A stretch of DNA of 64,000 nt. Source: Rhodosorus marinus CCMP1338. Lineage: Eukaryota > Plantae > Rhodophyta. The DNA lies in contig JAMWBK010000006.1 in the NCBI GenBank assembly GCA_029953675.1, positions 992,001-1,056,000 of the forward strand. Reading direction: 5' to 3'. Below are positions 9,987-64,000 of this stretch, piece after piece. Every line of letters starts with the position of its first letter. Positions within the stretch are counted from its first letter, which is position 1. Position numbers and translations under genes: made by a program. The notes below the pieces were generated by a model. The model saw nothing but the letters and a program-made list of their open reading frames with translations, made no database searches and was not told where the DNA came from.

Positions 9987-11471
9987 CTACTGTTCCTCCT
10001 CCTTCTGATCATCCAAGCAGGCCACTGCACGGGGGTTTCCAAACTGATCAATGTCGTGGCAGACAAGTGGCCCCTGTGCCATAAGACTCTTGTAGTTGCA
10101 CAGAACAGGATCGGGTTCGCGACTCTTATCGTTACACACGCAGTCGTGCTCCTCATCTTCCAAGTACGGTCGCAATTCCTCACAACCCCACAGATTAGCG
10201 CAGACCTCCTGATAGTTCTTCAGCACAACACATGGGCTGTCCGAAAGCGCCTTTTCGAAGCGAGGCGTGTTGTCCTCAGCCTCCAAACCAAGGAACTCGT
10301 AGATTTTGTTCATCACCCCAGCATTGTCTCGCACGTAGTCTTCGTACGTAATGTGAAGTATACACGGCCATTGGACAGAGTCTCTCAGGGCGAGGACCTG
10401 ATTCATCCCGTGCTTGGATATGTGCATAAGGTAAGCAAAGAATCGCAGGTTTGTGACGTCATAGTAGCACGATTCCGGGTTTGCCTTGCAGTGAGTTTCG
10501 GCTTCCTTCGCTGACAAGCCCTGCTGAGCGGAAAGATCGAATCTCGCGCGGATAGTATAAAGACCAATCGCAGCCTTGAAGCAGTTGTCACGTGTGAGCA
10601 CAATCAACCGCGTCTTGTAGCTGCTTACGAGCTGGTTCCAGAGGTCTGCAGCACCGAGAACATGCCCTGGACGCAGCTTGAAGCCAGGTTTGAGTCCTTT
10701 TTCAATGGATGCGTCGAATTTCACCCTAGTCATTTGCGCGGCCATTGCCGAACTTCGAGCCTTCTGCAGTGGCTCCATGGGCCACGGTATTTCAATCATT
10801 GAGTGCCTCCACAGCGTGGACATGATCGCCGATGAGCCAGAATGCCCGACAAAGCCCATTAGGAAAGATTCGCAAGGCCCGCTACAAACGTCTGCCTGAT
10901 CTCCGGAGCTAGTCTCGACTTGGGGAACCGTCGAAGCCGGCTCAGGCGCAAATTGTGCTCCCGGTTCCATGTTGGTAAGCGTTGGAACTTCACCAGCAAC
11001 TGCGGTGTTGTCACCTAGCAGAGTATTTGTTGGCGGAGCAGTCCCCATCGGTTCACTTGTTGCGGGAGCGTTCGTCATCGCCTGAGTTTCAGGAACTAAC
11101 AGATTCTGCGCGGGAGGAGCCATATCATCGATCGTTGTAGTTGACAATAATCCTGGTTCCTGCGGGACAACCTGCTCACCAACTGCCCACTGATCGGTTG
11201 CGTCAGTCTCCTCATGAGGATCCTCTCCATAGTAGCTCAGATCCTGATCCGTTGCGACAGTCTCCTCACGAGGATCCTCTCCATAGTAGCTCAGATCCTG
11301 ATCGGATGCAACTGTCTCCTCACGAGTTTCCTCTCCATAGTAGCTAAGATCCTGATCCGTTGCGACAGTCTCCCCACCAGCTCCCTCTCCATAGTAGCTC
11401 AGGCCCTCTCCCCTACCAAGCGCCACAAGCACGCAAAACAATACCACCAAATGAAGCCACGTCGAGTCCAT
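9987..11471 (-). CDS. Secretory-pathway sulfotransferase-fold protein (Stf0/NodH-like), copy 1; intronless, 494 aa
   Basis: Signal/anchor MDSTWLHLVVLFCVLVALGRG; 5'-PSB-like FVGHSGSSAIMSTL; GFK motif (KPGFKLRP); 3'-PB-like LTRDNCFKAAIG; HITYEDY; KIYEFLG; Cys-rich C-terminus. Confidence 0.7.
   Translation of the reverse strand: MDSTWLHLVVLFCVLVALGRGEGLSYYGEGAGGETVATDQDLSYYGEETREETVASDQDLSYYGEDPREETVATDQDLSYYGEDPHEETDATDQWAVGEQVVPQEPGLLSTTTIDDMAPPAQNLLVPETQAMTNAPATSEPMGTAPPTNTLLGDNTAVAGEVPTLTNMEPGAQFAPEPASTVPQVETSSGDQADVCSGPCESFLMGFVGHSGSSAIMSTLWRHSMIEIPWPMEPLQKARSSAMAAQMTRVKFDASIEKGLKPGFKLRPGHVLGAADLWNQLVSSYKTRLIVLTRDNCFKAAIGLYTIRARFDLSAQQGLSAKEAETHCKANPESCYYDVTNLRFFAYLMHISKHGMNQVLALRDSVQWPCILHITYEDYVRDNAGVMNKIYEFLGLEAEDNTPRFEKALSDSPCVVLKNYQEVCANLWGCEELRPYLEDEEHDCVCNDKSREPDPVLCNYKSLMAQGPLVCHDIDQFGNPRAVACLDDQKEEEQ
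11187..11402 (-). repeat. Intragenic 54-bp (18-aa) tandem repeat x4: LSYYGE-x4-ETVA(T/S)DQD
   Basis: Directly visible in DNA (ctccatagtagct(c/a)agatcctgatc recurring every 54 nt) and in the translation. Confidence 0.95.
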
Positions 11472-13492: not shown

Positions 13493-14692
13493 TCAGTTGA
13501 ACTCTCGGGCCCATCCACCACCTCCAGTTCCTGCCTCGTTAATGTCTTTACCCTCTGCTTCCATCTTCTCCTTCATAGCCAAGTACTGAGCATTATCGCA
13601 GGAGACCACTTGCTTGGCCCCCTTTTCAGTATAGTACGTGCAGAGGCTCTTCTTTAGAGCGAAAACCTTGTCAGCATCACAAAGAGTCGTGTTGTATGGG
13701 GGCGGTGGTGGATTGTCGCAAAAGCAGTTGTTCACTGGATCCTGCAGGTGCTCCCTATACTGCTCGCATCCCCAGAACATTTGGCAGAGTTCCTGGTAGT
13801 TTGATACCAGTTCACATGGGTTGTCCGGCAATGCCTTGTTGTACTTAGCCTTCAGGTCCATTCGTTGAACTCCCAGGAAGTCGTAGATCTTCGACATTTC
13901 AGAGTCGGGGTCTAGCACAAAGTCCTCATAGCGGGTAGTCATAATGCAAGGCCAGTCCACCATTTTCGCGATTCCTTTTGTCGTCTCCCGCGTAATGTAC
14001 GACTTCGCGAGAACGTACGCGAACTGATCGAATTGGGTTACCTCAAAACGGCAAAGCTCTGGATGCTTTTCGCAGTGCTCTTCGCTTGTCTCATCCCTCA
14101 TCCCTTGCTGAGATGAAAGGTCGCCTCGCACTCTGATCGAGTACAGCCCAATCGCACTCTTAACCACGTTGTCACGGTAGTTCAAAACCAGCCGAGTATG
14201 ATAATCGTCCACTAGCTCTTGCCAGAGCTCTTCCCCGTCTCGTATGTTTCCGGGTCTCACCTTGAAACCTTCTGCCATTGCTTCCGGAGCTAGCCTGTTC
14301 TGCTCGAAGAGGTACCGTGCAATTTCCTCCGATTGCTGAGGTTTTCCCACAGCGACGAGAAGTGGTTCATATGGGAAGGGTATGTTCAGCTCCGGGTGCT
14401 GCTCTAGAATAGACATGAGCGCAGTCGAACCAGAATGACCGATGAATCCAAGTATGAAAGACTCCGCCTTTCCAGTACACATTTTCGTCGGAATGATTTC
14501 CGATCCATCTAGACTCTGCTCTGCAGCAGAGGCCGGTTGTTCCTCATCCGTATTGATCGCCGACGGGAGACCAAAACCCACCTCACTCTCATCAATACCT
14601 TCCCCCCATGACTCCGTCACAGTGAGCTGACACATCGTAACACCCACGCACAAAACCGAAAACAAAACAAGCATCCAATCTTTCCCCCTCAT
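13493..14692 (-). CDS. Secretory-pathway sulfotransferase-fold protein, copy 2 (tandem paralog of 9987-11471); intronless, 399 aa
   Basis: Signal peptide; FIGHSGSTALMSIL; EGFKVRP; NYRDNVVKSAIGLY; TRYEDF; KIYDFLG; shares the cysteine pattern of copy 1. Confidence 0.7.
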   Translation of the reverse strand: MRGKDWMLVLFSVLCVGVTMCQLTVTESWGEGIDESEVGFGLPSAINTDEEQPASAAEQSLDGSEIIPTKMCTGKAESFILGFIGHSGSTALMSILEQHPELNIPFPYEPLLVAVGKPQQSEEIARYLFEQNRLAPEAMAEGFKVRPGNIRDGEELWQELVDDYHTRLVLNYRDNVVKSAIGLYSIRVRGDLSSQQGMRDETSEEHCEKHPELCRFEVTQFDQFAYVLAKSYITRETTKGIAKMVDWPCIMTTRYEDFVLDPDSEMSKIYDFLGVQRMDLKAKYNKALPDNPCELVSNYQELCQMFWGCEQYREHLQDPVNNCFCDNPPPPPYNTTLCDADKVFALKKSLCTYYTEKGAKQVVSCDNAQYLAMKEKMEAEGKDINEAGTGGGGWAREFN

Positions 14693-16330
14693 CTTTCCTC
14701 TGTCCTAAACACACCCTCTAACTTCAAAATCCACAACACCCTTCCCCACCAATAGCGAGAACCCAGATAACCCCCTCCCAGCCTTCCAGACAAAGATTTG
14801 TTAGAGCGCAAAACAGAAAAAAACAGAAAAACCTGCCTCCGTCCTCAGCTCCTCTCCAAAAGCAGCTTCTCTACCTACTTCAGTTCCAGACAGCACAGCA
14901 CTACCAAACCCCACCCTCCCTCCCGAAAGCCCCTAAAACACCCTCCCGCAACCCAACAAGAACAGTCGCTATCAAGGATCAATCCACAGCTCTCAAGGCT
15001 CACAGTCCCGTCCCAGAACAAAAACTCCCTTCACATGTATACGTAGACGCAGCGAGCAATCCTTACAAAACACATTTGAATGCAAAACACCCTTTCTGAT
15101 CCACAGCTTAGTACCTCTCCACGCCACGATCCCCCAAGACTGCCCTAGCCACCAGTAAATCCATCCAACCCTAAATACGACTACGTGTCCAAGAGAATCA
15201 TAATCTAGTAAGTTTAGGATATGTAGGCATATATTTAAAGGAGCAGCTGTCCTGCGATAAAAATATTTTTCAAAAATATTTTCCAGTTGAATGGAAACGG
15301 GTGACGCTTAAATGGGTGGATTAAATTTAAGATGATACGGTTTTTGGTTCTTTTTTGGGGGGTGTGTGATATGGCGATGGGTGGGTGTGGTTTGGATGTT
15401 TCGTGGGGTTTGAGGGGGCGTCCCGCTGCTTAAGACTGACTTGTAATGATCGCTCACCCCCCTTCCCCCCCCCCTTCGCGCAGAGGTGCTTTCCTTCTAG
15501 CCCTGTAGCTGATTGTTTGTTGGACGTAGACGAGTTGTTTTCGTGCGCTTGATTTGCCGTTCCCCGTCCGCATTGGCCCTGCGCTTGGCAACGTTGCTAG
15601 TCTATATTGGGGAGGGGGTGCTGGACGGTGACTGTGTTTCGAGTTCAAATTTTTTTCTGCTGATGGAGAGATATTTTCTACTGGACCTCACCCATGGGCT
15701 CAACGATGCCAACGCCAAAGGGTTGGGTTCACCCCCCGGACAAACCGCGGGGCAAGGTGGTTTAAAATTCCTTGAAGATGCAGGCATTTTGCTGCACTAG
15801 TGCACGTCCAGATCTATAACAGTTGGAAAAATAACCTTTGGGTTGACCTCACTCCATTCCCGACATCCGAACCCCGCACACCTTAAGCGACTACGAGCAT
15901 TCACGGTAAACACTATTCTGGGCTTCGACGCTTATATCTGAAAACCAAGATCATCACTTCATCAAACACATATCGATCTGAACCCACTTAGGCCCCTCAT
16001 AACCGAACCTCCTCTCTGGCGATGGGCTTTCCCCACCGCAGAAAGAACCTCGCACAGGTCATCCGCTCGCGAGATCAAACAAGTAGCTGAGAGTGGCATC
16101 GGTGCAGCCGCAGTACAAGCTGTAGAAAGTAAACTTTTATACCATTGAATTGACTGCCCACTCCTCTTTCCAAACAATGCTCCCCTTGCAAGTGGTGGGC
16201 TACTCTTACCCGCACACCGGACGCATCGATTTAGGAAGTCGATCTCCCGACGGCCGGGGAAGTTGGCTGAGAATCACAACCACAGGAAGCTTGAGGGTTG
16301 AGAGTCAGGGTTAGTATTGAGAAGATAATC

Positions 16331-18462
16331 ATGACGGACAACGACCAGCTTCGCGCTGGACAGAAGGCGCAGACGAAATCAGCGAGAGCGAGGACTCTTG
16401 TCGCACCAGTGATCGTCTCGTCAGATAACGTGCAGTACTCGGAGGATGAGATCATCTCCAAATACAGCTACACGGATACAAAGGTCACGATCGGTGAAGA
16501 TGGAACAGTGACCGCATTCCCGCAGAATTCTGTGTTTGAGTTCAAGACCAGACGTCGAGTTTCTCGACTGGGTCTGATGATGGTGAGCGAAACCGCACCA
16601 ACAGATTTCGCTGTGAGAAGAACATGCCTGGGAGAAGTTCCTCCCGGGCGTCGCACCAATGGAATTAAGCAATCCATCATCCAGATTCCCAGGCACTTAC
16701 TTGTGAGTGCATGTTCTCGTCTAGGTTGGCCTGGGAGGAAACAATGGAACTACAGTTGCTGCGGCAATGTACGCGAAGAAGCACTCGCTTGAATGGCAAA
16801 CACGGACTGGTACTCACGTCTCAAACTACAAGGGTTCACTTACACAGTGTGGAACATTCAGGGTAGGAACATCTTCTGAAGACGGGACCGATGTTTACAG
16901 TCCCCTGTCGAGCCTGGTTCCAATGGTCAACCCGGATGATATGCCGGTTTCCGGCTGGGACATCAGCGGACGCAACCTCGCGGATGCCATGGACTCTGCG
17001 CAAGTTTTGGAGCCAGATTTGAGGAATAAGCTGAGACCGTTTGTGGATAAGGTGGTACCACTGCCAGCGGCTTTTGATACTGACTTTATCGCGGACAATC
17101 AGCTTCCACGAGCTGACAATCTTATTCCCGGCCAGAAGCAAGAGCAGCTGGAGCAGCTCCGAAGAGACATTCGAAATTTCAAGGAGACCCAAGGCCTGGA
17201 TGAAGTAGTGGTGATCTGGACAGCAAATTCAGAACGGTATTCGAAGGAGATCGAAGGTGTCAATGACACGAGCGAGAATCTTCTTAAAGCAATTCAGGGC
17301 AATCATCCAGAGGTCAGTAGAGTTCAATGGTTGACCTCTGGCGGAAGTTTCACGCAGCAGCCAGGCAGGAACCGATAGCTTCTACTCTGACGAGAGAGCT
17401 TTGTACTTCCTTGTGCTGATTCGTTTCTTCCGTGAACAGGTTTCGCCGTCCACTCTGTATGCTGTAGCGTCGATTCTCGAAGGAGCTCCATACGTGAATG
17501 GGAGCCCTCAGAACACGCTTGTCCCAGGTTGCGTAAAACTGGCGGAAGAACTGCAGGTGTTTATATGCGGAGATGATTTTAAGTCAGGGCAAACGAAAAT
17601 GAAATCCGTCCTTGTTGACTACTTGATTGGCTGTGGAGTCAAGGTTTCGTTAGCACCAGGCTAAGAAGATGATTGAGGATTTCTTGGTTCCGTCTCCGTA
17701 TTGAGGTACTGATCTTAATTTCCCTTTTCTGGAATGCTCCAGGTGAAGACGATGGTCACCTACAATCACCTCGGCAACAATGACATGTACCAGCTTACGG
17801 ACCAAGTAATGTGGAAACCCAAGTCCGCCGCTAAAAGCAAGGTTATTGAGGATCTTGTGGAAGCGAACGAAGTACTTTATCCGAATAACGAAAAGCCGGA
17901 CCATGTTGTGGTAGTCAAGTGAGTGTTCCGCCAAGGACGGGTGCCTGTCATGTCCAAGCTTGATAATCTATCTGACCAATTGGTTCACCCTTGCAGGTAT
18001 GTGCCTTTCCTCGGCGATTCTAAACGTGATGTCTCTGAATACACCTCGGAGACTTTCCTTGACTCTCACTATACGATGATCATGCACAACGAATGCTTGG
18101 ATTCAGCGCTTTGCGCTCCACTGATCATCGATCTCGCCGTGCTCTGCGAGCTTTTTCAAAGGGTAAGCAGTGGTCTCAGGTCAGCCGAGTACAACTCCTG
18201 CGTACTGAACGACCACTGTTGTCCTGAAACCCCATGGTGTCGTTAGATCCGCGTGAAAGTGCAGGGGAGTGATGAGTTCAAGTCAATGCATCCAGTTCTC
18301 TCTGCACTAGGCTTCTTCATGAAGATTCCGAAAACCGCTGGTGAAGAGCCGATTGTGAATGCGTTGAATAGGCAGCGAGCTTGTATAGAAAACCTCGTCA
18401 AGGCACTGGTCGGACTTCCCGCGGAAAGCCATCTACTGCTTCCAACCAAATGCCAAGCATGA
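16331..18462 (+). CDS. INO1: Myo-inositol-1-phosphate synthase; multi-exon
   Basis: [109 protein letters not shown] are all MIPS hallmarks. Confidence 0.97.
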
Positions 18463-54208: not shown

Positions 54209-56278
54209 CTCGTTCCTTCTCTATCTCTCATGTCCATTTCCGTTCAAAACTTTCCCGAGTGCCTGTTGCCGAGCTATTCCTACGTTGTCATCGTGCACGT
54301 GGGAAGCGAGTCTGTGCCTTGCGGCACCTGCTGGACTACAAAATTTTGCCGTTACCGCCGATCTCATCTTCAAGAATTTCAAATATTTAAAACAAACAAT
54401 GGATTGACTTCAATCCATATAAACGTTTTTTATTTTTCAATTCATGATCATGATTTTGTATTTGGATTCATCTATTTTGATTGCGAGGAAAGAGCGGATA
54501 AGACAGACTGTCCGTTTCGAGAAGAGTGCGGGAGGCTTCGTCGAAGTCCGCGGGTTCGATTTCCACTCAGAGAACCTACGAGCGCGAAAGAATGAGGTGG
54601 GGTCATGGATTTGTAATTTTCTCACTAAGTCCTCTAGGACTTTGCGGCGGTTCTACAAGCGCAGCTGATGCCTCCGCAGCCAAAAACTGACTAGTTTCAA
54701 AGAGGATGAACGACTGAACTAACTGCTTACACCCATGAGACGCTTTTTAGTTGTATAAACGTGTGGAACACGCCCAGTTCACCCATCATTGCAGATTACG
54801 GTGCTCAGCCTGGCGAACAACGTATCGGAAATCTTGCTTTTTACCTCGTTGTCCGAAGCGAATATAGAGACTGAGCCTTTTCTGGGACTGCCTTGGCGGA
54901 TCGAGCTTTGTTCATAAGCCAAAGACCAAGTTGGGGCTAGTTACGTCCTGCCCCATCTTCCGCTATAATCTGTCCAACCACGGCGTGAGTGCAGGTTTGG
55001 CTCATTGGTCAAACGCTGATAAGATGATAGAGCATCTTCACTAGCTGAGCTAAAAAATCCGTTTTCTCCCTCAAAGCCTCATCCGAAGTCACGAAAGTTC
55101 CTGAGAACGAGTTCAGTCACAAACGGATAACCCAGCCTTGCTTACAGGGATTTCCCCCGATAATCATCAACCCGCTTACACTAAGCTCGAATTCAGCAAG
55201 AGAGAAAATACCCCTTTGCAAGAGATCTCCAGAAAAGTTGTATTAATTGTATTACTTAATAAATATGATCTATTCGTATTTTGAACCTGCAGTTCACCGG
55301 CTGGGAGGGTTTCGCTTTTTCCTGGCTTTCGGAACAGTTGGATCCAGTTCGCTTTGAGAGGACAGTGGCCTAGGTGGGGTCCTATTCGCTTAGACCTAGT
55401 TTAGAGACCTTTCCATTATTCGCTCTTATTGATTTAAAGATTCGCATGGATCTCGATGGCAAGGAGAGGTGTACCAGGACGCCAGAACCGTCCGCCACGA
55501 TAGCGTGAAAAAACAATATGGGCAATGAAACGTTTGTCAGAGAAAAACAGAGCCCAAGCCTGCCCCGCGAGACAAAAAAGATTAAAGCGATATTAAGATA
55601 TGCGTTCTTTGTTGTCTCTTCCCGCCCTAAGGGGTTGAGGAAAAACGTCCTCACCCAGTTGCCGGAACCCCGTTCATTGGGCGGCCAGTCGGTCAAAATC
55701 TTGCTGGGTGAAAAGTGATCTTCTTCTTGTTCATAAAAGTGTTAATTTTTGAGCGTGAGTTGGAAGCAACGTTGACGCGTCGCTTTTGGAAGGCTTGCTG
55801 GCCCGCAGCGGACATAGCCTAGTCCTTGATTCGGGCTGAGTGACCGTCCTCTCACAACCTCTGCTAGGGGAGTCGCCTTTTTATATCCGTAGAGACCGAT
55901 ATTTTGCATCTTGAGATTCTTTCTAGCCCATTGGGGCAAAAGCTGTCGGCTGAGTAGGACCCTTGCATTGTACCCGGTTTTCCTCTGACTCGAAACTTCA
56001 ACCATTCTCCATTTAGATTGGATGATCGTCCTCTAGACAGAAAGCGGCTTCCCCGGGTCTTGTAGAGCGATAAGGCGATATTCGATACTGGTTCGCTCAA
56101 AATCCCAGCTCACCCCCCCCGGCACTAGCCACAGCTCGAGGGACAATAAAAACCTACTCCTCGCTTTCCTTCTCGATTAGGGTACACATAACTCATAGGG
56201 CACTAGAGCGTAACATTGACGGTGACCCAGAGAAGATCAGGAAGGAGATTGTTGGAGAGACGACGTTCCAGGAGCATC

Positions 56279-57079
56279 ATGAAGACTGCTGTGTCTATCG
56301 CGCTGGTTGTGGCATTGGTTGCCGTTCTCGGGGTATCGGAAGCTGCGCCCTTCGTATGCAAGAACCCCAACGTCGAGAAGCCGAACTTCAGGACCATCAC
56401 TCACGGTCAGAGCCATAACGCACGCGGTTTGACAACCGCCTTCGAGTACTTCAAGGATATTCTTGGAGGCGAAGATAACGGAAGCAACCCGGGACCACTC
56501 AGGAAAGGACACCGATCTATCAACTGGGATGCTCCAGTCGTTCCCTTTGAGTTCCCGAGGAAGTTCTTCGAAGAGACTGTCACTCGTGGACTCGCTGTCG
56601 CAAGCAAGAACAACAAGTTCCGTGTGAGCAACCCGGAACCCAACCACATCGGTGACGACAAGTTCTCCACCATCAACCGCCGTGAGTCCAAGAAGTTCCT
56701 GACCTTCAGCCCCAAGAGACTGTTCACACCGATCAAGGACAACGAGTTCTGGATCCGATTCACGGTCCCCGGCAAGAGGACCAAGGCTGTCGTAAGAGGA
56801 TTCGGAGCGGTATTCGTCGGAGTAGACTTTGAAAGAACTACCAAGATGACTGCCTACGACCTCGACGACTGTGTGATCGCGTCCGAGTACGTTGAGGCGA
56901 AGAGGAACGGACTGTCGTTCCTTGGAATCTACTTTGAGAAGCCGATCATTGCTCGTATTGTGATTGAGCTTGGCAATTTCGAAATCGATGCGAGGAATTA
57001 CTGCGGATACAGGTGCGATGAGGACGTCGTCGTTTTGGATGACTTCTTGTACGGCGAGCCACAGAGCATCTTCGCTTAA
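56279..57079 (+). CDS. Secreted protein of an uncharacterised bacterial-like family, tandem copy 1; intronless, 266 aa
   Basis: Signal peptide MKTAVSIALVVALVAVLGVSEA; motifs GHRSINWD, FSPKRLF, GFGAVF, GLSFLG, DDFLYGEP; strong C/G-ending codon bias. Confidence 0.9.
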   Translation: MKTAVSIALVVALVAVLGVSEAAPFVCKNPNVEKPNFRTITHGQSHNARGLTTAFEYFKDILGGEDNGSNPGPLRKGHRSINWDAPVVPFEFPRKFFEETVTRGLAVASKNNKFRVSNPEPNHIGDDKFSTINRRESKKFLTFSPKRLFTPIKDNEFWIRFTVPGKRTKAVVRGFGAVFVGVDFERTTKMTAYDLDDCVIASEYVEAKRNGLSFLGIYFEKPIIARIVIELGNFEIDARNYCGYRCDEDVVVLDDFLYGEPQSIFA

Positions 57080-58747
57080 GAAGGGTTTTGCTACAAAACA
57101 TCCGATATCCAATAAGGATCCACCGCCGGAGTGCACCCTTAGGCCCGCCGTTTCACTGGGCATATCAATAAATCGGAAATATCCCAAGTTGCTGTTGAAA
57201 ATTGAGATTCGAAGATTCGGCACTGTGTTTACTTCTACTCACAGAAATTTACTGTTTGAAGGCACCCGTAATTCCCTCTAGTTCGCTTTCTCTTCATCAA
57301 CCCAACTCTCTGGCGGTTTTACTGGCATGCCTTAAGCGCTACGCGAGGGCGTAAAAGGGAACGGCAAGCGCCACTCGATCCAACGAATTCAACACTAGTC
57401 AGCTTGCCTTCCGAATGCCCTACCCGCTAAACCTGCCTAGTCCAGCTGAGGCGGTGGTTTGAAGTGCGTCTGTTTCAGCCAGGTCTCATCTAGGTCTCGG
57501 CTAGGTATCCGTGAGGAAACGTTAGTGGTGGCCTCCACTCTACGAATACAAAACGATGAAAAAAGCGCTTCCAAATTGTTCACCAAGTCTAAGTCGCCTA
57601 TGAAAAAGGGGATATTCTATATGACACTATGGCACAACAACTCTCTCTTCAATATTTTAACCGATTCAAAACAAGATTTTGACAAACATCTGCATTTATC
57701 ATTGAAACTACGGAGACTCCCATTGGAGTACCTTCTTCACTACTAGATTGGCCAGCAAGTTTTCGTTTGTATTAGAAACTAAACACAAAATCCTGTTTCT
57801 GGAAGCTATTGGGTTCGCTTTTGACCAATCACATATACCTCGTTCCATTTCAGGGCCGAATTTTAGCCCCATTAATTCTCAGGCTTAATCAATACGCCAC
57901 GATAAAGACGTTCGATGCAAGGTGGAGGAGATCTACTAGGCCCGGTAAACGTCAGGAGCGGCGTGCTGGCCTGTTTTGATTCTTGCTTACATACGGTGAT
58001 TAGAAGGTGACACCGAAAAGATTCAATAGATCGTATTTTTCAGTGAGTGTATTTTTCCTTGATAATGAATGCCGGGGAATCGGTTATGTCAAAACTAATT
58101 GGAGATTCGGATTTTTATCTCTCTCGTCAGCGTTTTCATTGGGGATCGGATTTTTGGCAAGGTCTATACGATAACACCGCGGCGAGGGGCTCAAACGGGT
58201 GGGGGGAGATGGAGAGTGAGTCTGTCTCATGGATAACAGCTCGCGCGACGGAGCGAGTAGTCAGCTTGATGCCCGTAGCGAGGAGATTGCTGCCCCTGAT
58301 AAAAAGATGAGCCAGTTTTATTGGGAAAACAATCGGACAAATGAACTCACGGAAGATGTCGGGCTGTGCTCCTCAGGGTCGGCTCCGGCCAGCTAACTGT
58401 TGAAATTTTCCGGGGCCAATGTTTACTGGCCCCGAGCCCCTGGATTCCGGTGCTTGTAGGCAACCAGAACTTTGGGCGTATCTGCAAAACTTCAGGAGAC
58501 CCGGCGAGGGCTAAAAACTATGGGAACCTGTATGGGACAGACGTCTGCCGTTTAGTAACGGAAGTCTTTGGGTCCCCTCCTCGCAGGGAAAGAGGACGAA
58601 AATCAGTACATTCTGTGCTCCTTGTGGATGCAACAAATGGGGCGAACTATCTCAGAGTGCGACGGTGGCAATCTCGATTCCGTTTACCTTGCGGATGCCT
58701 TACTTGGCCCACCACTTTGTCATCCCTATTGTCATCCCTATACAGAC

Positions 58748-58755
58748 TATATATA
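58748..58755 (+). promoter_or_regulatory. TATA-like element (tatatata) about 135 bp upstream of copy 2; same element at 61144-61151 for copy 3
   Basis: Position conserved relative to the ATG in both duplicated units. Confidence 0.45.
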
Positions 58756-58884
58756 GCTGATCCTCCTGCTCCTTCTACATTCGGGTACTCGAAACTCATC
58801 AAGCACCAGAGACAGTAGCATTGACGGAGACCCAGAGAAGATCAGCAAAGAGACTGTTAGAGAAGACTACATTCAAGGAAGACC

Positions 58885-59685
58885 ATGAAGACTGCTGTGT
58901 ATATCGCACTTGTGGCGGCATTGGTTGCCGTTCTCGGTGTAGCAGAGGCGGCGCCGTTCGTCTGCAAGGACCCACACTTCCAGAAGCCCAACTTCAGGAC
59001 CATCACTCACGGCCAGAGCCACAACGCACACGGTTTGAAAACCGCCTTCGACTACTTCAAGGATATTCTTGGAGGCAAAGACAACGGAAGCAACCCGGGA
59101 CCACTCAGGAAAGGACACCGATCTATCAACTGGGATGCTCCAGTTGTTCCCTTTGAGTTCCCGAGGAAGTTCTTCGAGCAGACCGTCACTCGTGGACTCG
59201 CTGTCGCAAGCAAGAACAACAAGTTCCGTGTGAGCAACCCGGAACCCAACCACATCGGTGACGACAAGTTCTCCACCATCAACCACCGTGAGTCCAAGAA
59301 GTTCCAGACCTTCAGCCCCAAGAGACTGTTCACACCGATCAAGGACAACGAGTTCTGGATCCGATTCACGGTCCCTGGAAAGAAGACCAAGGCTGTGGTG
59401 AGAGGATTCGGAGCGGTGTTCGTGGGCGTTGACTTGGAGAGAGTGACCAAGATGACTGCCTACGACATCAACGACTGTGTGATCGCGACCGAGTACGTTG
59501 AGGCGAAGAGGAACGGACTGTCGTTCCTCGGATTCTACTTCGAGAAGCCGATCATTGCCCGTGTTGCGATTGAGCTTGGCAACTTCGAGATCGATGCGAG
59601 GAACTACTGTGGATACAGGTGCGATGAGGACATTGTCGTTTTGGATGACTTCTTGTACGCGGAGCCACAGAGCATCTTCGGTTAA
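58885..59685 (+). CDS. Secreted protein of an uncharacterised bacterial-like family, tandem copy 2; 266 aa
   Basis: Paralog of 56279-57079; ATG to TAA, intronless. Confidence 0.9.
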   Translation: MKTAVYIALVAALVAVLGVAEAAPFVCKDPHFQKPNFRTITHGQSHNAHGLKTAFDYFKDILGGKDNGSNPGPLRKGHRSINWDAPVVPFEFPRKFFEQTVTRGLAVASKNNKFRVSNPEPNHIGDDKFSTINHRESKKFQTFSPKRLFTPIKDNEFWIRFTVPGKKTKAVVRGFGAVFVGVDLERVTKMTAYDINDCVIATEYVEAKRNGLSFLGFYFEKPIIARVAIELGNFEIDARNYCGYRCDEDIVVLDDFLYAEPQSIFG

Positions 59686-61280
59686 GAAGGATTTTTGATA
59701 GAGAACATCCGATATCCTACAAGTATCTAGTAGGGACCCTTTCAGTGGGTTGTACATATCAATAAATCGGAAACATCCTACTTGCTACAGAAACTTAAGA
59801 CTCGGAAATTCAGAGCAGAATGAAACAAGAGCTCGGTTTCCCGTCCTTTGGTCATACACTTAACCCAATCGTAGCGCTGTATTCAACAGGAGTCAGTAGA
59901 GTCCTACACTACTAGAGAGCTCTCCACAGTATCGTGTGAATACCAGAAACTAGGAACTAGCATTTGTGGCAAGGCCTGTGCACTTGCACTTGAACTCATT
60001 GGAACGAGAATAATACTGCGCTACTGAGTGCTAGTAAAGTCCAGTAGAACGAAGAGTAGTCGACGCGCTTGGCGTGGTTTCTATTTTACACTGGTCGTTT
60101 TTTTTTTGTACCCCTGCTTAATTGGCCAACAGGTTATTGTTAAGCAGTCTAAACCTGATCCTTTTAAGCTGTTTGGTCTTCTTTTGGCCACGACTATACC
60201 TAGATTAGTGGGTCCTCCCACGTCCCTTCCGAATTTTAGCCCCATTAGATCTGAGCCTTATTCACTAGTCTCCCATTGAGATGCGGTCCGATGCAACCCA
60301 GAGGATCGCTCGGTGTAGCGTCAGGAGCGGCGTGCTGATCCGTTTGATTGTTGCTTACATACAGTTATTAGCAAAGGTGACAATGAGAGATGCAAGGGAT
60401 CGTATTTTTCGGTGAGTGTATCTTCCCTCAATGAAGAGTTGGCGGGAACAAAAAAGGGTTTTGATTTGTGGAGATTCGGATTTTATCGCTCTTGTTAAAA
60501 GCCGTTTTTTCATTATGGATTGGATTCGGCAGGGTCCATAAGATAAGACTGCGGCGAGGGGCTAAAACGCGTAGGGGAAGTGGAGAGTGAGAATCTGTCT
60601 CGTGATGACTCCTCGCCCAGCGCAGAGTGGGGTAGTTTTGATGTCTGTCGCAACGTGATTGGTGTCCCTGATAAACAATCAATCAATCAGTTTTATTCCT
60701 AAACAAAAAATCGGATAAAACGAAAAGTCACAGAAGTCGGGCTGTGCTCCTCAGGCCCGGTTCGGGGCTAGCTAACTTTTGAACATTTTCCAAGGGCCAA
60801 TGATGGTTTCAAAAATTTTTACTGGGCACGAGTCCCTGGATTCCGGTGCTTGTAGGCAACCAGAACTTTCGACAGATCTGAAAAAGTTCAAGAAATCCGG
60901 CGAGGGCTAAAAGCCGTGGGAACCTGTATGGGACAGACGTCTGCCGTTTAGTAACGGAAGTCTTTGGGTCCCCTCCTCGCAGGGAAAGGGGACGAAAATC
61001 AGTACATTCTGTGCTCCTTGTGGATGCAACAAATGGGGCGAACTATCGCAGAGTGCGACGGTGGCAATCTCGATTCCGTTTACCTTGCGGATGCCGTACT
61101 TGGCCGACCACTTTATCATCCCTATTGTCATCCCTATACAGACTATATATAGCTGATCCTCCTGCTCCTTCTACATTCGGGTACTCGAAACTCATCAAGC
61201 ACCAGAGACAGTAGCATTGACGGAGACCCAGAGAAGATCAGAAAAGAGACTGTTAGAGAAGACTACATTCAAGGAAGACC

Positions 61281-62081
61281 ATGAAGACTGCTGTGTATAT
61301 CGCACTTGTGGCGGCATTGGTTGCCGTTCTCGGTGTAGCAGAGGCGGCGCCGTTCGTCTGCAAGGACCCACACTTCCAGAAGCCCAACTTCAGGACCATC
61401 ACTCACGGCCAGAGCCACAACGCACACGGTTTGAAAACCGCCTTCGACTACTTCAAGGATATTCTTGGAGGCAAAGACAACGGAAGCAACCCGGGACCAC
61501 TCAGGAAAGGACACCGATCTATTAACTGGGATGCCCCAGTCGTTCCCTTTGAGTTCCCGAGGAAGTTCTTCGAAGAGACTGTCACCCGTGGACTCGCTGT
61601 CGCAAGCAAGAACAACAAGTTCCGTGTGAGCAACCCTGAACCCAACCACATCGGTGACGACAAGTTCTCCACCATCAACCACCGTGAGTCCAAGAAGTTC
61701 CAGACCTTCAGCCCCAAGAGACTGTTCACACCGATCAAGGACAACGAGTTCTGGATCCGGTTCACGGTCCCTGGAAAGAAGACCAAGGCTGTGGTGAGAG
61801 GATTCGGAGCGGTGTTCGTGGGCGTTGACTTGGAGAGAGTGACCAAGATGACTGCCTACGACATCAACGACTGTGTGATCGCGTCCGAGTACGTTGAGGC
61901 GAAGAGGAACGGACTGTCGTTCCTTGGATTCTACTTCGAGAAGCCGATCATTGCCCGTGTTGCGATTGAGCTTGGCAACTTCGAGATCGATGCGAGGAAC
62001 TACTGTGGATACAGGTGCGATGAGGACATTGTCGTTTTGGATGACTTCTTGTACGCGGAGCCACAGAGCATCTTCGGTTAA
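61281..62081 (+). CDS. Secreted protein of an uncharacterised bacterial-like family, tandem copy 3; 266 aa
   Basis: Differs from copy 2 at two residues (FFEQTV/FFEETV and IATEY/IASEY). Confidence 0.9.
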   Translation: MKTAVYIALVAALVAVLGVAEAAPFVCKDPHFQKPNFRTITHGQSHNAHGLKTAFDYFKDILGGKDNGSNPGPLRKGHRSINWDAPVVPFEFPRKFFEETVTRGLAVASKNNKFRVSNPEPNHIGDDKFSTINHRESKKFQTFSPKRLFTPIKDNEFWIRFTVPGKKTKAVVRGFGAVFVGVDLERVTKMTAYDINDCVIASEYVEAKRNGLSFLGFYFEKPIIARVAIELGNFEIDARNYCGYRCDEDIVVLDDFLYAEPQSIFG

Positions 62082-63654
62082 GAAGGATTTTTGATAGAGA
62101 ACATCCGATATCCTACAAGTATCTAGTAGGGACCCTTTCAGTGGGTTGTACATATCAATAAATCGGAAACATCCTACTTGCTACAGAAACTTAAGACTCG
62201 GAAATTCAGAGCAGAATGAAACAAGAGCTCGGTTTCTCGTCCTTTGGTCATACACTTAACCCAATCGTAGCGCTGTGTTCAATAGGAGTCAGTAGAGTCC
62301 TACACTACTGTAGAGCTCTCCACAGTATCGAGTAAATACCAGAAACTAGGAACTAGCATTTGTGGCAAGGCCTGTGCACTTGCACTTGAACTCATTGGAA
62401 CGAGAATAATACTGCGCTGCAGAGTAGAACGAAGAGTAAACGATGCCTTTGGCGTCGTTTTCTATTTCGACAGGCAGGCTCGAGAATAATACTGCGCTTG
62501 CAGAGATAAACGAAGTGAAGCCGACGGCGTTGATGAAGTTTTCTACCTCGATAACGAGGCTCTAGACACGTATTTTCTTCTCCTATTGATCTTACTTCCT
62601 GTTTTGGGTGGCGGTGGATCGGGTCTGTCGGTGGAGAAACGAAGTTGAGATTTCGTCGGCCGTTTGGAAATGGAAAGGGGAGAAGAGGGGCAGGGGCGTT
62701 CCGGTAGATAGACGAGTATGGGATTGAATTTCGCCCAACGGAGTGTTGAGATAATTTGCTGCGCGTTCAAGCGGATCACCTCACCTGTCATGCTAAACGG
62801 GGGATTTCCTTACATGCAAAAATTTCGCGAATCTACGGACTGTGTTCTTGGGGACGAGCTCCTTCGACCGAGAAACGTCGAAAACCTGCCAAGGGCCAAC
62901 GCTAATTCGAATAATGTTGACTCGAGCTAAACGAAGCTTTCAGTAAGATTTGCGCAGCATGAGCCCCATAAATTCTGATTCCCATATGCAACCTAAAACA
63001 TGAGCAGATCCGCTGAACAGGTTGGGGAATTGGCGAGGGCTAAAAGGAGTCGGAATCCATATGTGACGGATTCCCGTCGGATGCATTTCGCGAATACGAA
63101 CGGTTCCAATTTAATAATCGGCTTGTTCACATGCACACCTCGCTTATGGAAAGGGTAAATACTATTTCAGAACTACTCTCCAATTAATATTTTAAACAAT
63201 TCAAGACAAGGTTGACGAAAGGAGCTTTAGTTTTTGAGCCAATACACTGATTTTTCCGTTTGTATTTTATTCGCAACTGGATTGGCTAGCAGTTTTTTTG
63301 TTTTTCTTAAAACGTAGTCGGAATTCGCTCTTTTCGAAGCTAAATTTTTTCTTGTCGACCAATTGTTATACCGAGAAAGAGTAGGCCCCTTTCAAAACCA
63401 ATCCAAATTTTAGCCCCAATATTTTTATTAAACAAATTCATTCAATATATATTGCGCGCTTATGTACTGCTGTCGATGTTGGAGCGCGCGATCTTCACTC
63501 GCGTGGTCTTTTTTTCGCTTCGGGGGTTTTTTCTTCAGTTTCCGATTAAACAGATTCATTCAATATTTTTGCGATCAACTATTAAACACACACAAGGCTT
63601 GCGTAATTATTCCCTCTAACCTGTGTTTCAATGTTTTTTGAAGAATTACGAGCC

Positions 63655-64000
63655 CGGCTAAGCGTCAGGATCAGCGGGGGGATCTGTCTTTGATTACAGA
63701 TTACATATGCTGATTAGCAAAGGTGACACGGAAAGGTTGAATGCATCATTTTTTTTTGTTAGCGTATTTTATTTTCTATTTACGTGCGGGAGGTTAGGAT
63801 TTCACCCCTTTTGCTACGCGTTTTTTTCATTGAGGATTGGATTTTTTTTGTAGTCCGTTCTAACACAGAGGCGAGGGGATAAAACGGGTAAAGGCCGGGA
63901 AACACAGTGTAATTCTGTCCTGGGATGACACCTCGCCCACGAAGTATGCATTGATGTCCGCTGACAAGGCGAATGTTGCCCCTGGTAAACGGTCAATCAG
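63655..64000 (+). repeat. Diverged copy of the upstream module of the tandem secreted-protein genes (probable 4th unit continuing beyond the window)
   Basis: agcgtcagga..., gattagcaaaggtgac, gcgaggg..taaaacg and ccctg(g/a)taaac..tcaatcag match 60315-60690 and 57940-58316. Confidence 0.7.

What the first reader, a model, noticed from the sequence alone, without database searches (positions are those of the whole stretch)
56279..64000. Expanding tandem array of intronless, codon-biased secreted proteins resembling a bacterial extracellular domain
Seen: three 266-aa signal-peptide proteins in tandem, all intronless in an intron-rich neighbourhood. Codons are strongly C/G-ending, copies 2 and 3 differ by only 2 aa, and conserved Cys occur in FVCK, DCVIA and NYCGYRC. 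Recalled knowledge: the motif chain G-x-R-x-INWD / FF..RG / FSP.RLF / F.VPG / GFGAVF.xVD / GLSFLG / DDF.Y.EP resembles uncharacterised secreted proteins of bacteria (some PEP-CTERM-associated) and hypothetical red-algal proteins. Inference: a horizontally acquired extracellular-matrix or surface protein family under dosage amplification, with no described function.
Basis: partly seen in the sequence, partly recalled or inferred. Interest (0 to 1): 0.7.

Follow-up and report, generated by a model that had tools for sequence, protein, structure and literature searches.

The report
Tandem secreted-protein genes in Rhodosorus
A red alga (Rhodosorus) carries at least three side-by-side, actively maintained genes for a small secreted protein whose single domain is an undescribed bacterial cell-surface module, and in red algae this module has switched from acidic to basic, which suggests that it binds their sulfated cell-wall sugars.

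Summary
Three intact 266-aa ORFs lie at 56279-57079, 58885-59685 and 61281-62081 (+). Copies 2 and 3 differ by 2 aa, and copy 1 is 90% identical to them. A fourth repeat unit starts at about 63645 and runs off the window.

The contig is nuclear DNA of a Rhodosorus red alga: a neighbouring carrier protein is 94% identical to R. marinus, and neighbouring genes have spliceosomal introns.

The roughly 225-aa domain has no Pfam, NCBIfam or PDB relative. It occurs in at least 562 bacterial species, on proteins with varied surface anchors (PEP-CTERM and others), and in red algae of three classes. The AlphaFold model is a confident beta-sandwich, with only weak CBM/lectin-type matches.

Any transfer from bacteria is ancient, because the eukaryotic sequences form one clade (89.5% NJ bootstrap). 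The codon bias uses the host's own preferred codons, so it points to high expression rather than foreign origin. Intron-free genes are not unusual in this window.

New here:
- Copies 2 and 3 are homogenised by a sharply bounded 1.5-kb gene-conversion tract.
- All copies are under purifying selection (dN/dS 0.06-0.19).
- The red-algal clade has inverted its charge (median +12, against -14 in bacteria).

Best guess: an abundant secreted protein that binds the polyanionic matrix. The function is untested.

The parts
56279..57079 (+). Copy 1 coding sequence. 266 aa, intron-free, TAA stop. The first 22 codons (56279-56344) encode a signal-peptide-like segment.
   Evidence: It is 90% identical to copy 2. 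dN/dS against copy 2 is 0.19.
58885..59685 (+). Copy 2 coding sequence (266 aa). The signal-peptide-like segment is 58885-58950.
   Evidence: It was the query for the homology searches and for the AlphaFold model (pLDDT 89.5, pTM 0.86).
61281..62081 (+). Copy 3 coding sequence (266 aa). The signal-peptide-like segment is 61281-61346.
   Evidence: It differs from copy 2 at 11 nt and 2 aa. dN/dS is 0.06.
56142..56154 (+). TATA-like box of copy 1 (GACAATAAAAACC), about 135 nt upstream of the ATG.
   Evidence: It is conserved in position with the boxes of copies 2 and 3. Assigning it as a promoter element is inference.
58745..58757 (+). TATA-like box of copy 2 (GACTATATATAGC).
61141..61153 (+). 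TATA-like box of copy 3 (GACTATATATAGC).
56214..56240 (+). Conserved leader block CATTGACGG(A/T)GACCCAGAGAAGATCAG of copy 1. The same block lies at 58819-58845 and 61215-61241.
   Evidence: (D4). It is probably 5' UTR, which is inference.
57164..57179 (+). Conserved ATCAATAAATCGGAAA block with an AATAAA polyadenylation-type signal, about 75-90 nt after the stop of copy 1. The same block lies at 59758-59773 and 62154-62169.
57856..60086 (+). Repeat unit 2: distal upstream module, promoter, coding sequence and 3' region.
   Evidence: It matches 60229-62467 at 89% over 2279 columns.
60229..62467 (+). Repeat unit 3.
58500..60020 (+). High-identity tract of unit 2, about 98.5% identical to about 60900-62400 of unit 3. 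It is sharply bounded, and I interpret it as a gene-conversion tract.
   Evidence: In 100-nt windows, identity is 93-100% inside the tract, 58-85% upstream of it and 34-52% downstream.
56167..57218 (+). Extent of unit 1 that is still alignable with units 2 and 3 (87.5%).
63645..64000 (+). Start of a fourth repeat unit. It is the distal upstream module, homologous to 57950-58330 and 60300-60700. Its coding sequence would begin near 64.6 kb, outside the window.
   Evidence: Identity is 68-70% against 49% for controls.

Best explanation
This is a tandem array in the nuclear genome of a Rhodosorus red alga, with three complete genes and a fourth unit starting at the window's edge. Each gene is an independent, intron-free transcription unit.

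Each encodes a signal peptide followed by one beta-sandwich domain of about 225 aa and nothing else. There is no membrane anchor and no sorting tag, so the product should be a soluble protein of about 28 kDa released to the cell surface or mucilage.

The domain belongs to a large, uncurated family. In bacteria it sits on cell-surface proteins with interchangeable anchors: PEP-CTERM and related tags, the type IX secretion tail and CWB2. It also occurs next to adhesin-type modules.

Red algae hold an old, single-origin branch of this family, most likely acquired from a bacterium before the red-algal classes split. That branch lost the anchor, gained a conserved Cys pair and switched from strongly acidic to basic.

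I infer that the protein binds the alga's polyanionic (sulfated) extracellular polysaccharide as an abundant matrix or surface component. The array supplies dosage and is kept uniform by gene conversion and purifying selection.

Shown: the gene structure, the homology, the fold class, the selection, the conversion tract and the charge switch. Inferred: secretion, high expression, the ligand, and the direction and date of the transfer.
For: Array and integrity.

Organism: the neighbouring mitochondrial carrier is 94% identical to Rhodosorus marinus A0A7S2ZFB2, and the next hit is Purpureofilum at 53%. Neighbours include SKA1 with an intron and a multi-exon inositol-phosphate synthase gene.

Own eukaryotic signals: a TATA-like box at about -135 and an AATAAA signal at about +80, conserved in all three units.

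Selection: dN/dS is 0.17-0.19 for copy 1 against copies 2 and 3, and 0.06 for copy 2 against copy 3.

Conversion: a 1.5-kb tract at about 98.5% identity lies inside flanks of 58-85%.

Host-type optimal codons: NNC is used in 145 of 175 cases, against 288 of 486 in the neighbours (Fisher p = 6.5e-9). AAG reaches 90% and GGA is favoured for Gly.

Family:
- 338 word-indexed hits, and 1220 representatives of 50%-identity clusters at E <= 1e-3.
- At least 562 bacterial species loci across many phyla, the best being Acaryochloris at 45%.
- Only sorting tags are recognised by Pfam or NCBIfam.
- Partner domains are CHRD, FG-GAP, RTX, Big_7, Dockerin, HYR, Calx-beta, CWB2, DUF4394 and the T9SS tail. 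No CAZyme catalytic domain was seen.

Fold: AlphaFold pLDDT 89.5 and pTM 0.86, an all-beta sandwich. The best, though weak, Foldseek matches are CBM61, CBM4, CBM29, CBM32/47, the gingipain adhesin domain and the C-terminal domains of giant-virus collagen-like proteins.

Phylogeny: the split between eukaryote-type sequences (49) and named bacteria (37) has 89.5% support, and window plus Rhodosorus has 88.5%. In the extended tree the clade holding all named eukaryotes (78 of 143 sequences) contains no named bacterium.

Anchor loss and Cys pair.

Charge: the red-algal clade has median net charge +12 and 30 of 31 members are basic. The other eukaryote-type sequences have a median of -17.5 and bacteria -14.
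Against: - There is no direct evidence of transcription, secretion or binding.
- Foldseek TM-scores are at most 0.40 normalised to the query and at most 0.49 normalised to the target, so 'CBM/lectin-like' is a fold class and not a match.
- The window's own copies are the least basic of the red-algal clade (+2 to +5).
- That 31-member clade has only 11.5% NJ bootstrap support.
- Codon bias predicts high expression, yet the best R. marinus transcript is only 55-58% identical. Either an orthologue is not expressed in those cultures or the family evolves fast.
- The many invariant polar residues (R79, N82, W83, D84, R103, R147, D254, D255, E260), together with 45% identity between cyanobacteria and red algae, are more than most binding modules keep. 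This could indicate catalysis.
- Bacterial gene neighbourhoods gave no functional clue.
Confidence: 0.5

Rival explanations
1. The domain is an enzyme that acts on extracellular polysaccharide, for example a jelly-roll lyase, hydrolase or transglycosylase. The array provides large amounts of a matrix-remodelling activity.
For: There is an unusually high number of invariant polar and aromatic residues across bacteria and algae. Identity between cyanobacteria and red algae is 45%. In bacteria the domain is often the only globular part of the protein. It is never seen appended to a known CAZyme catalytic domain, as a mere CBM usually is. Beta-jelly-roll folds host several lyase and hydrolase families (established knowledge).
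Against: There is no sequence or structural match to any solved enzyme. No conserved His or Tyr appears among the invariant columns. Tandem repeats of the domain, 2-6 per protein, next to adhesin modules are more typical of binding or structural modules.
Confidence: 0.2
2. It is a secreted cationic defence or microbiome-interaction protein. It binds the negatively charged surfaces or EPS of bacteria living on the alga, and it descends from a bacterial surface domain that recognises the same matrices.
For: The basic charge is specific to the red-algal clade. The protein is secreted, small and disulfide-stabilised. The genes are tandemly amplified. The bacterial relatives are typical of EPS- and floc-forming, PEP-CTERM-bearing bacteria.
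Against: dN/dS of 0.06-0.19 and concerted evolution differ from the diversifying selection common in defence families. There is no similarity to known antimicrobial folds.
Confidence: 0.15
3. It is a recent horizontal transfer, bacterial contamination, or an assembly duplication artefact.
For: The genes are intron-free, have bacterial homologues at 45% identity, and copies 2 and 3 are nearly identical.
Against: The array is flanked on the same contig by intron-containing eukaryotic genes and by a carrier protein 94% identical to R. marinus. It has host-type codon preference and TATA and AATAAA signals. Its closest relatives are Rhodosorus paralogues inside a eukaryote-only clade. Units 2 and 3 differ by many substitutions and indels outside the conversion tract.
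Confidence: 0.03
4. It is a plastid lipid-associated (fibrillin) protein, as the UniRef name of the Chondrus homologue suggests.
For: Only the UniRef cluster name attached to P0020.
Against: None of the 108 family members, P0020 included, matches PAP_fibrillin or any other Pfam domain apart from sorting tags. The N-terminus is a hydrophobic ER-type signal peptide, not a transit peptide.
Confidence: 0.01

Closest known systems
Bacterial surface proteins with the same domain, for example the PEP-CTERM proteins of Lusitaniella coriacea (P0037), Nitrosomonas (P0053) and Kiloniellales (P0059), and the Acaryochloris marina locus L007
   Same: The domain of about 225 aa is homologous (42-45% identity over about 80% of the query, E 1e-42 to 1e-49) and carries the same invariant motifs (GxRxINWD, GFGAVF, GLSFLG, DDFxYxEP). 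An N-terminal export signal is present, and most are single-domain proteins.
   Different: The window's proteins end 5 residues after the domain and have no PEP-CTERM or other sorting tag. They are basic rather than strongly acidic. They carry the C27/C198 pair and a CGxxC pair. They are expressed from eukaryotic-type transcription units.
Hypothetical red-algal proteins: Rhodosorus marinus A0A7S3E8G5 and A0A7S3A265 plus the MMETSP transcripts of the P0001 group, Chondrus crispus XP_005710290 and XP_005716070, and Pyropia yezoensis KAK1859285 and KAK1860214
   Same: Same clade, same architecture (signal peptide plus one domain, no anchor), basic charge and the conserved C27/C198 pair. The genes are intron-free where genomic DNA is available.
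   Different: Identity is only 46-58%. Those genes are dispersed or single in the loci examined, whereas here they form a tandem array undergoing concerted evolution. None has been characterised.
Choice-of-Anchor-A domain (PF20597) and the diatom Trailins
   Same: The parallel is conceptual. Both are bacterial surface domains found with interchangeable anchors (LPXTG, PEP-CTERM, T9SS). Both were taken up by an alga, stripped of the anchor and used in secreted extracellular material (bioRxiv 10.1101/2023.03.06.531300).
   Different: There is no detectable sequence relationship. No Pfam or NCBIfam choice-of-anchor model matches any member. Trailins are large multi-domain adhesives, whereas these are single-domain proteins of 28 kDa.
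Carbohydrate-binding modules and lectin-type jelly rolls (CBM61, CBM4-2, CBM29, CBM32/47, CBM86; gingipain cleaved-adhesin domain)
   Same: All are all-beta sandwiches. These are the top Foldseek matches, with probabilities of 0.8-0.9.
   Different: TM-scores are at most 0.35 (query) and 0.49 (target), with RMSD of 6-10 A and 7-13% identity. The domain is about 80 residues larger than these modules and is not found attached to CAZyme catalytic domains.
[quoted passage not shown]
   Same: It is a protein that forms part of the sulfated cell-wall polysaccharide complex of a unicellular red alga (PMC3958852). This is the role proposed here.
   Different: The parallel is functional only and comes from the literature. 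The sizes differ, and I did not test any sequence relationship.

Membership tests
Uncurated 'GxRxINWD ... GFGAVF ... DDFxYxEP' extracellular domain family (bacteria plus red algae) | Significant similarity to family members across the full length of the domain | tested here: met
   One search gave 338 hits, with bacterial PEP-CTERM proteins at E 1e-40 to 1e-46 covering 77-85% of the query. One search gave 1220 cluster representatives at E <= 1e-3. One search gave 562 confirmed bacterial loci.
Uncurated 'GxRxINWD ... GFGAVF ... DDFxYxEP' extracellular domain family (bacteria plus red algae) | Invariant and near-invariant residues: N67, G77, R79, I81, N82, W83, D84, P89, P93, F97, G104, G174-F175-G176-A177, S213, D254, D255, E260, P261 | tested here: met
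   (108-sequence alignment). All of these residues are present in copies 1-3.
Uncurated 'GxRxINWD ... GFGAVF ... DDFxYxEP' extracellular domain family (bacteria plus red algae) | N-terminal export signal | tested here: met
   There is a hydrophobic N-terminus (Kyte-Doolittle 15-residue mean 2.8-3.0 at residues 5-19), an AEA|AP cleavage-type motif and no other hydrophobic segment. pLDDT is low for residues 1-20. No dedicated signal-peptide predictor was available.
PEP-CTERM / exosortase substrates (PF07589, TIGR02595) | C-terminal PEP motif, transmembrane helix and basic cluster | tested here: not met
   The window's proteins have no Pfam or NCBIfam hit. They end in QSIF(G/A), 5 residues after the domain, whereas tagged bacterial members have tails of 26-36 residues.
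Choice-of-anchor families of NCBIfam and Pfam (e.g. CAA, PF20597) | Match to a curated choice-of-anchor model | tested here: not met
   No such model matched any of the 108 members at E <= 0.01.
Choice-of-anchor families of NCBIfam and Pfam (e.g. CAA, PF20597) | The same domain found with several alternative C-terminal anchors (behaviour, not homology) | tested here: met
   Anchors seen are PEP-CTERM, VPLPA-CTERM, PTPA-CTERM, PEPxxWA-CTERM, VPDSG-CTERM, Por_Secre_tail and CW_binding_2.
CBM / galactose-binding-domain-like jelly rolls | Shared fold with a solved CBM or lectin (TM-score above 0.5) | tested here: inconclusive
   In one search the best matches had probabilities of 0.85-0.91, but TM-scores were at most 0.35 (query) and 0.49 (target). 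In one search the best viral match had a query TM-score of 0.40.
CBM / galactose-binding-domain-like jelly rolls | Demonstrated carbohydrate binding, or a conserved ligand-binding site | not testable with these tools
   This needs recombinant protein and glycan arrays or ITC.
PAP_fibrillin (the name carried by the Chondrus homologue in UniRef) | Match to Pfam PAP_fibrillin | tested here: not met
   apart from sorting tags, no Pfam family matched any member, P0020 included.

The most novel reading that the evidence does not exclude
An ancient, still unnamed bacterial cell-surface domain was captured by the ancestor of the non-cyanidiophycean red algae. There it lost its anchor and had its charge inverted, from about -14 to about +12. 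It became a major protein partner of the sulfated-galactan matrix. If so, this is the first sequence-defined family of matrix-organising proteins shared by unicellular and seaweed red algae. The Rhodosorus array would be its high-dosage, concertedly evolving form.
Probability: 0.25. Interest if true: 0.65.

Novelty: new variant of a known kind. Interest (0 to 1): 0.42.

Why it matters
The domain is widespread. It has 1220 clusters at 50% identity, occurs in at least 562 bacterial species and is found in three red-algal classes, yet no curated family, structure or function exists for it. It is therefore a clear candidate for a new domain entry.

Very few protein components of the red-algal extracellular matrix are known. 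That matrix is the source of agar, carrageenan and microalgal sulfated polysaccharides. A small, probably abundant, secreted protein family with a lineage-specific switch to positive charge gives a concrete and cheap hypothesis to test: binding to sulfated polysaccharide.

The locus is also a clean small example of concerted evolution in a red-algal nuclear genome, with a sharply bounded 1.5-kb conversion tract. Finally, it shows why an intron-free structure and codon bias should not be read as evidence of gene transfer.

Tried and rejected
- Pfam and NCBIfam scans of the window's proteins and of 108 family members returned only C-terminal sorting tags. The weak NCBIfam PEP-CTERM family hits lie at or near the tail and score 16-30 bits against cut-offs of 60-125.
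- PDB sequence searches with one protein and with the family profile found nothing meaningful.
- Foldseek against PDB and BFVD gave only generic beta-sandwich matches.
- Identifying the organism through the inositol-phosphate synthase exon failed: 15 unnamed hits, the best at 65%. The mitochondrial carrier then settled it.
- An exact look-up showed that the window's protein is not on record in the assembly collection.
- Bacterial gene neighbourhoods (Lusitaniella, Nitrosomonas, Ningiella) showed no conserved operon or partner.
- A literature search for the Chondrus accessions found no papers, and general HGT, PEP-CTERM and red-alga searches found nothing on this family.
- Rfam and tRNA scans of the window found nothing.
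- tblastn found no further copy or pseudogene elsewhere in the window.
- I considered a 5'-UTR intron because of a GTGAGT-like motif in the distal upstream module. I set it aside because a TATA-like box and a conserved leader lie directly upstream of each ATG. This is untested without RNA data.
- I considered endosymbiotic origin from the plastid ancestor, because cyanobacteria give the best bacterial identities. The NJ trees do not place the eukaryotes next to cyanobacteria, so this stays unresolved.
- Whether one relative with a gene-dense context (P0041, L006) is bacterial or eukaryotic also stays unresolved. Other acidic members of the eukaryote-type clade sit on intron-bearing, gene-sparse contigs.

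Full report
**1. What is in the sequence**

Three complete ORFs of 266 aa lie head to tail on the + strand at 56279-57079, 58885-59685 and 61281-62081. The start-to-start spacing is 2606 and 2396 nt.
- Copies 2 and 3 differ at 11 of 801 nt (9 synonymous, 2 replacements: Q99E and T202S).
- Copy 1 differs from copy 2 at 63 nt and 26 aa.
- No further copy or pseudogene is detectable in the window by tblastn.
- The last 356 bases (63645-64000) align along their whole length with the distal upstream part of units 2 and 3. Identity is 68-70%, against a mean of 49% and a maximum of 55% for 30 random control segments.

A fourth unit therefore starts there. Its coding sequence would begin near 64.6 kb, outside the window.

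**2. Whose DNA it is**

The window is eukaryotic nuclear DNA. It encodes SKA1, a CTLH protein, a mitochondrial carrier, a methyltransferase, an isocitrate/isopropylmalate dehydrogenase exon, an inositol-phosphate synthase and two sulfotransferases.
- SKA1, 2 kb upstream of copy 1, has a GT..AG intron of about 95 nt.
- The inositol-phosphate synthase gene has at least three exons.
- The carrier protein is 94% identical to Rhodosorus marinus A0A7S2ZFB2. The next hit, from Purpureofilum (also Stylonematophyceae), is at 53%.

The organism is therefore a Rhodosorus, close to but not identical with the MMETSP strains. This excludes bacterial contamination.

**3. Anatomy of each unit**

All three copies share four features:
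- a TATA-like box about 135 nt before the ATG (56142-56154, 58745-58757, 61141-61153);
- a conserved 27-nt leader block;
- an uninterrupted coding sequence;
- a conserved block with AATAAA 75-90 nt after the stop.

Each copy therefore looks like a self-contained eukaryotic transcription unit. This is inferred from sequence, because no RNA data were available.

The protein begins with a classical hydrophobic signal-type segment ending AEA|AP. It has no other hydrophobic stretch and ends 5 residues after the domain. The mature protein is about 27.8 kDa with a pI of 8.6-9.1.

**4. Evolution of the array**

dN/dS is 0.17-0.19 between copy 1 and copies 2 and 3, and 0.06 between copies 2 and 3. All copies are therefore under purifying selection.

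Units 2 and 3 align over about 2.3 kb, but identity is very uneven:
- about 98.5% in a sharply bounded tract from about 58,500 to 60,020, which covers the promoter, coding sequence and 3' region;
- 58-85% in the 650 nt upstream of that tract;
- no similarity downstream of it.

This is the signature of gene conversion inside an older duplication. It also rules out an assembly artefact. So the '2 aa difference' reflects concerted evolution, not a duplication that has only just happened.

**5. Codon bias**

GC3 is 0.68-0.72 and ENC 42-47, against GC3 0.51-0.64 and ENC 55-61 in seven neighbouring coding ORFs.

The bias is codon-specific and points the same way as the neighbours' weaker preference:
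- NNC over NNT in 83% of cases against 59% (Fisher p = 6.5e-9);
- AAG at 90% against 65%;
- GGA favoured for Gly, although it ends in A.

This is the pattern of translational selection on a highly expressed native gene, not foreign composition. Two sulfotransferase genes in the window are also uninterrupted. An intron-free structure is therefore not exceptional here. Relatives are also called as single uninterrupted genes in the Chondrus genome and on metagenomic contigs that look eukaryotic.

**6. The protein family**

Neither Pfam nor NCBIfam recognises the domain, in the window's proteins or in any of 108 relatives. Only C-terminal sorting tags are hit.

The family is nevertheless large:
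- 338 hits in the word-indexed search;
- 1220 representatives of 50%-identity clusters at E <= 1e-3, of which 740 are at E <= 1e-10;
- at least 562 confirmed loci among GTDB species genomes. These span Cyanobacteria, Alpha-, Beta- and Gammaproteobacteria, Actinomycetota, Nitrospirota, Planctomycetota, Bacteroidota, Acidobacteriota, Gemmatimonadota, Chloroflexota and others.

In bacteria the domain occurs in three settings:
- alone behind a signal peptide;
- with PEP-CTERM, VPLPA-, PTPA-, PEPxxWA- or VPDSG-CTERM tags, a type IX secretion tail or CWB2 repeats;
- in 2-6 tandem copies, next to CHRD, FG-GAP, RTX, Big_7, Dockerin, HYR, Calx-beta, LTD and DUF4394 modules.

No glycoside hydrolase or lyase catalytic domain was found among 17 multidomain proteins. 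Three bacterial gene neighbourhoods share nothing. The domain thus behaves like the 'choice-of-anchor' class of bacterial surface domains, without belonging to any curated member of that class.

**7. Structure**

AlphaFold2 with the 108-sequence alignment gives a confident all-beta sandwich with two short helices (pLDDT 89.5, pTM 0.86).

Foldseek finds no close solved or viral relative. The best matches are CBM61, CBM4-2, CBM29, CBM32/47, CBM86, the gingipain adhesin domain, a spirochaete flagellar sheath protein and the C-terminal domains of giant-virus collagen-like proteins. TM-scores are at most 0.40 normalised to the query and at most 0.49 normalised to the target.

**8. Phylogeny and the transfer question**

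Named eukaryotic homologues are:
- Rhodosorus marinus, with three paralogue groups at 50-58% identity to the window;
- Chondrus crispus, with two;
- Pyropia yezoensis, with two;
- one diatom transcriptome (Grammatophora);
- one unnamed EukProt entry.

No plant, animal or fungal protein appears among the best 120 hits, although nr and UniRef are in the database.

I built a neighbour-joining tree of 86 sequences over 197 columns.
- All named eukaryotes and 30-odd unnamed sequences form one side of a split. All 37 named bacterial sequences fall on the other side. Support is 89.5% of 200 bootstraps.
- The window's copies group with the Rhodosorus paralogues at 88.5%.

With 57 more representatives added, the smallest clade holding all named eukaryotes has 78 of 143 sequences and still contains no named bacterium. 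Several unnamed members sit on gene-sparse contigs with split eukaryote-type genes. One (L006) has a denser context, and I could not assign it.

The narrow eukaryotic distribution against the very broad bacterial one makes a bacterium-to-alga transfer the economical reading. It predates the split of Stylonematophyceae from Bangiophyceae and Florideophyceae. Its donor is unresolved: cyanobacteria give the best identities, but the trees do not place them as sister. These NJ trees cannot settle rooting.

**9. A lineage-specific change that bears on function**

In the eukaryote-type clade the anchor is absent. Cys27 and Cys198 are conserved in 39 and 41 of 44 sequences, against 13 and 12 of the other 64.

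The domain's net charge also differs by lineage:
- bacteria: median -14, with 33 of 38 acidic;
- non-red eukaryote-type sequences, including the diatom: median -17.5;
- the 31-member clade holding all named red algae: median +12, with 30 of 31 basic.

Red-algal matrices are polyanionic sulfated galactans. A protein integral to such a matrix is known from Porphyridium (PMC3958852).

This is why I favour a role as a secreted binder or organiser of the alga's own sulfated polysaccharide, produced in quantity from a homogenised gene array. There are three caveats:
- The red-algal clade itself has weak bootstrap support (11.5%).
- The window's copies are only mildly basic (+2 to +5).
- Nothing has been measured.

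An enzymatic role is the main rival, given the many invariant polar residues. A role in binding bacteria comes next.

**10. Verdict**

The arguments for recent horizontal origin do not hold, and any transfer is ancient.

The feature is an undescribed variant of a known theme, in which bacterial surface domains are reused as algal extracellular proteins, as with the diatom Trailins. Its interest is moderate. That would rise if the predicted binding to sulfated polysaccharide is confirmed.

Noticed in passing
window 9987-11471 (-) and 13493-14692 (-): Two paralogous sulfotransferase genes lie 2 kb apart. They share 37% identity over 341 aa and match Pfam Sulfotransfer_3. Both are uninterrupted ORFs with hydrophobic N-termini. 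They are plausible Golgi enzymes for sulfated polysaccharide, on the same contig as the secreted-protein array.
   Followed up: partly
window 16325-17919 (+): The myo-inositol-1-phosphate synthase gene has at least 3 exons. Its best database relatives are only 65% identical and short (270-350 aa, unnamed metagenomic or Logan contigs). That is unusually distant for this normally conserved enzyme.
   Followed up: partly
window 56237-57223, 58873-59757, 61269-62153 (- strand): Long antisense ORFs of 294-328 aa overlap each of the three genes. They have no homologues of their own in this analysis and are best explained as a by-product of the NNC/NNG codon bias, which removes stop codons from the opposite strand.
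   Followed up: partly
window 57950-58330, 60300-60700, 63645-64000: A distal upstream module of about 350-400 nt, 580-930 nt before each ATG, is kept at 68-74% identity in units 2, 3 and 4 but is absent upstream of copy 1. It contains a GTGAGT-like motif. It has no conserved ORF and no Rfam match. It could be a regulatory element or a remnant.
   Followed up: partly
P0001, P0121, P0123 (Rhodosorus marinus MMETSP transcripts): One R. marinus transcriptome contains three transcripts of the P0001 paralogue group that are 96-100% identical. This suggests recent duplication, or alleles, of another branch of the same family in that strain.
   Followed up: no
window 62401-62485 and 62481-62566: A short local tandem duplication (74% identity) lies in the spacer after copy 3. 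It is followed by an AT-rich stretch (63140-63640) with a repeated AAACA(A/G)ATTCATTCAATAT motif.
   Followed up: no
L004 3721-6876 and L090 1473-4696: Two metagenomic contigs that look eukaryotic carry an acidic homologue followed, on the same strand, by an NDH2-type (Pyr_redox_2) gene. The conserved gene order indicates a second, non-red eukaryotic lineage that holds the family.
   Followed up: partly
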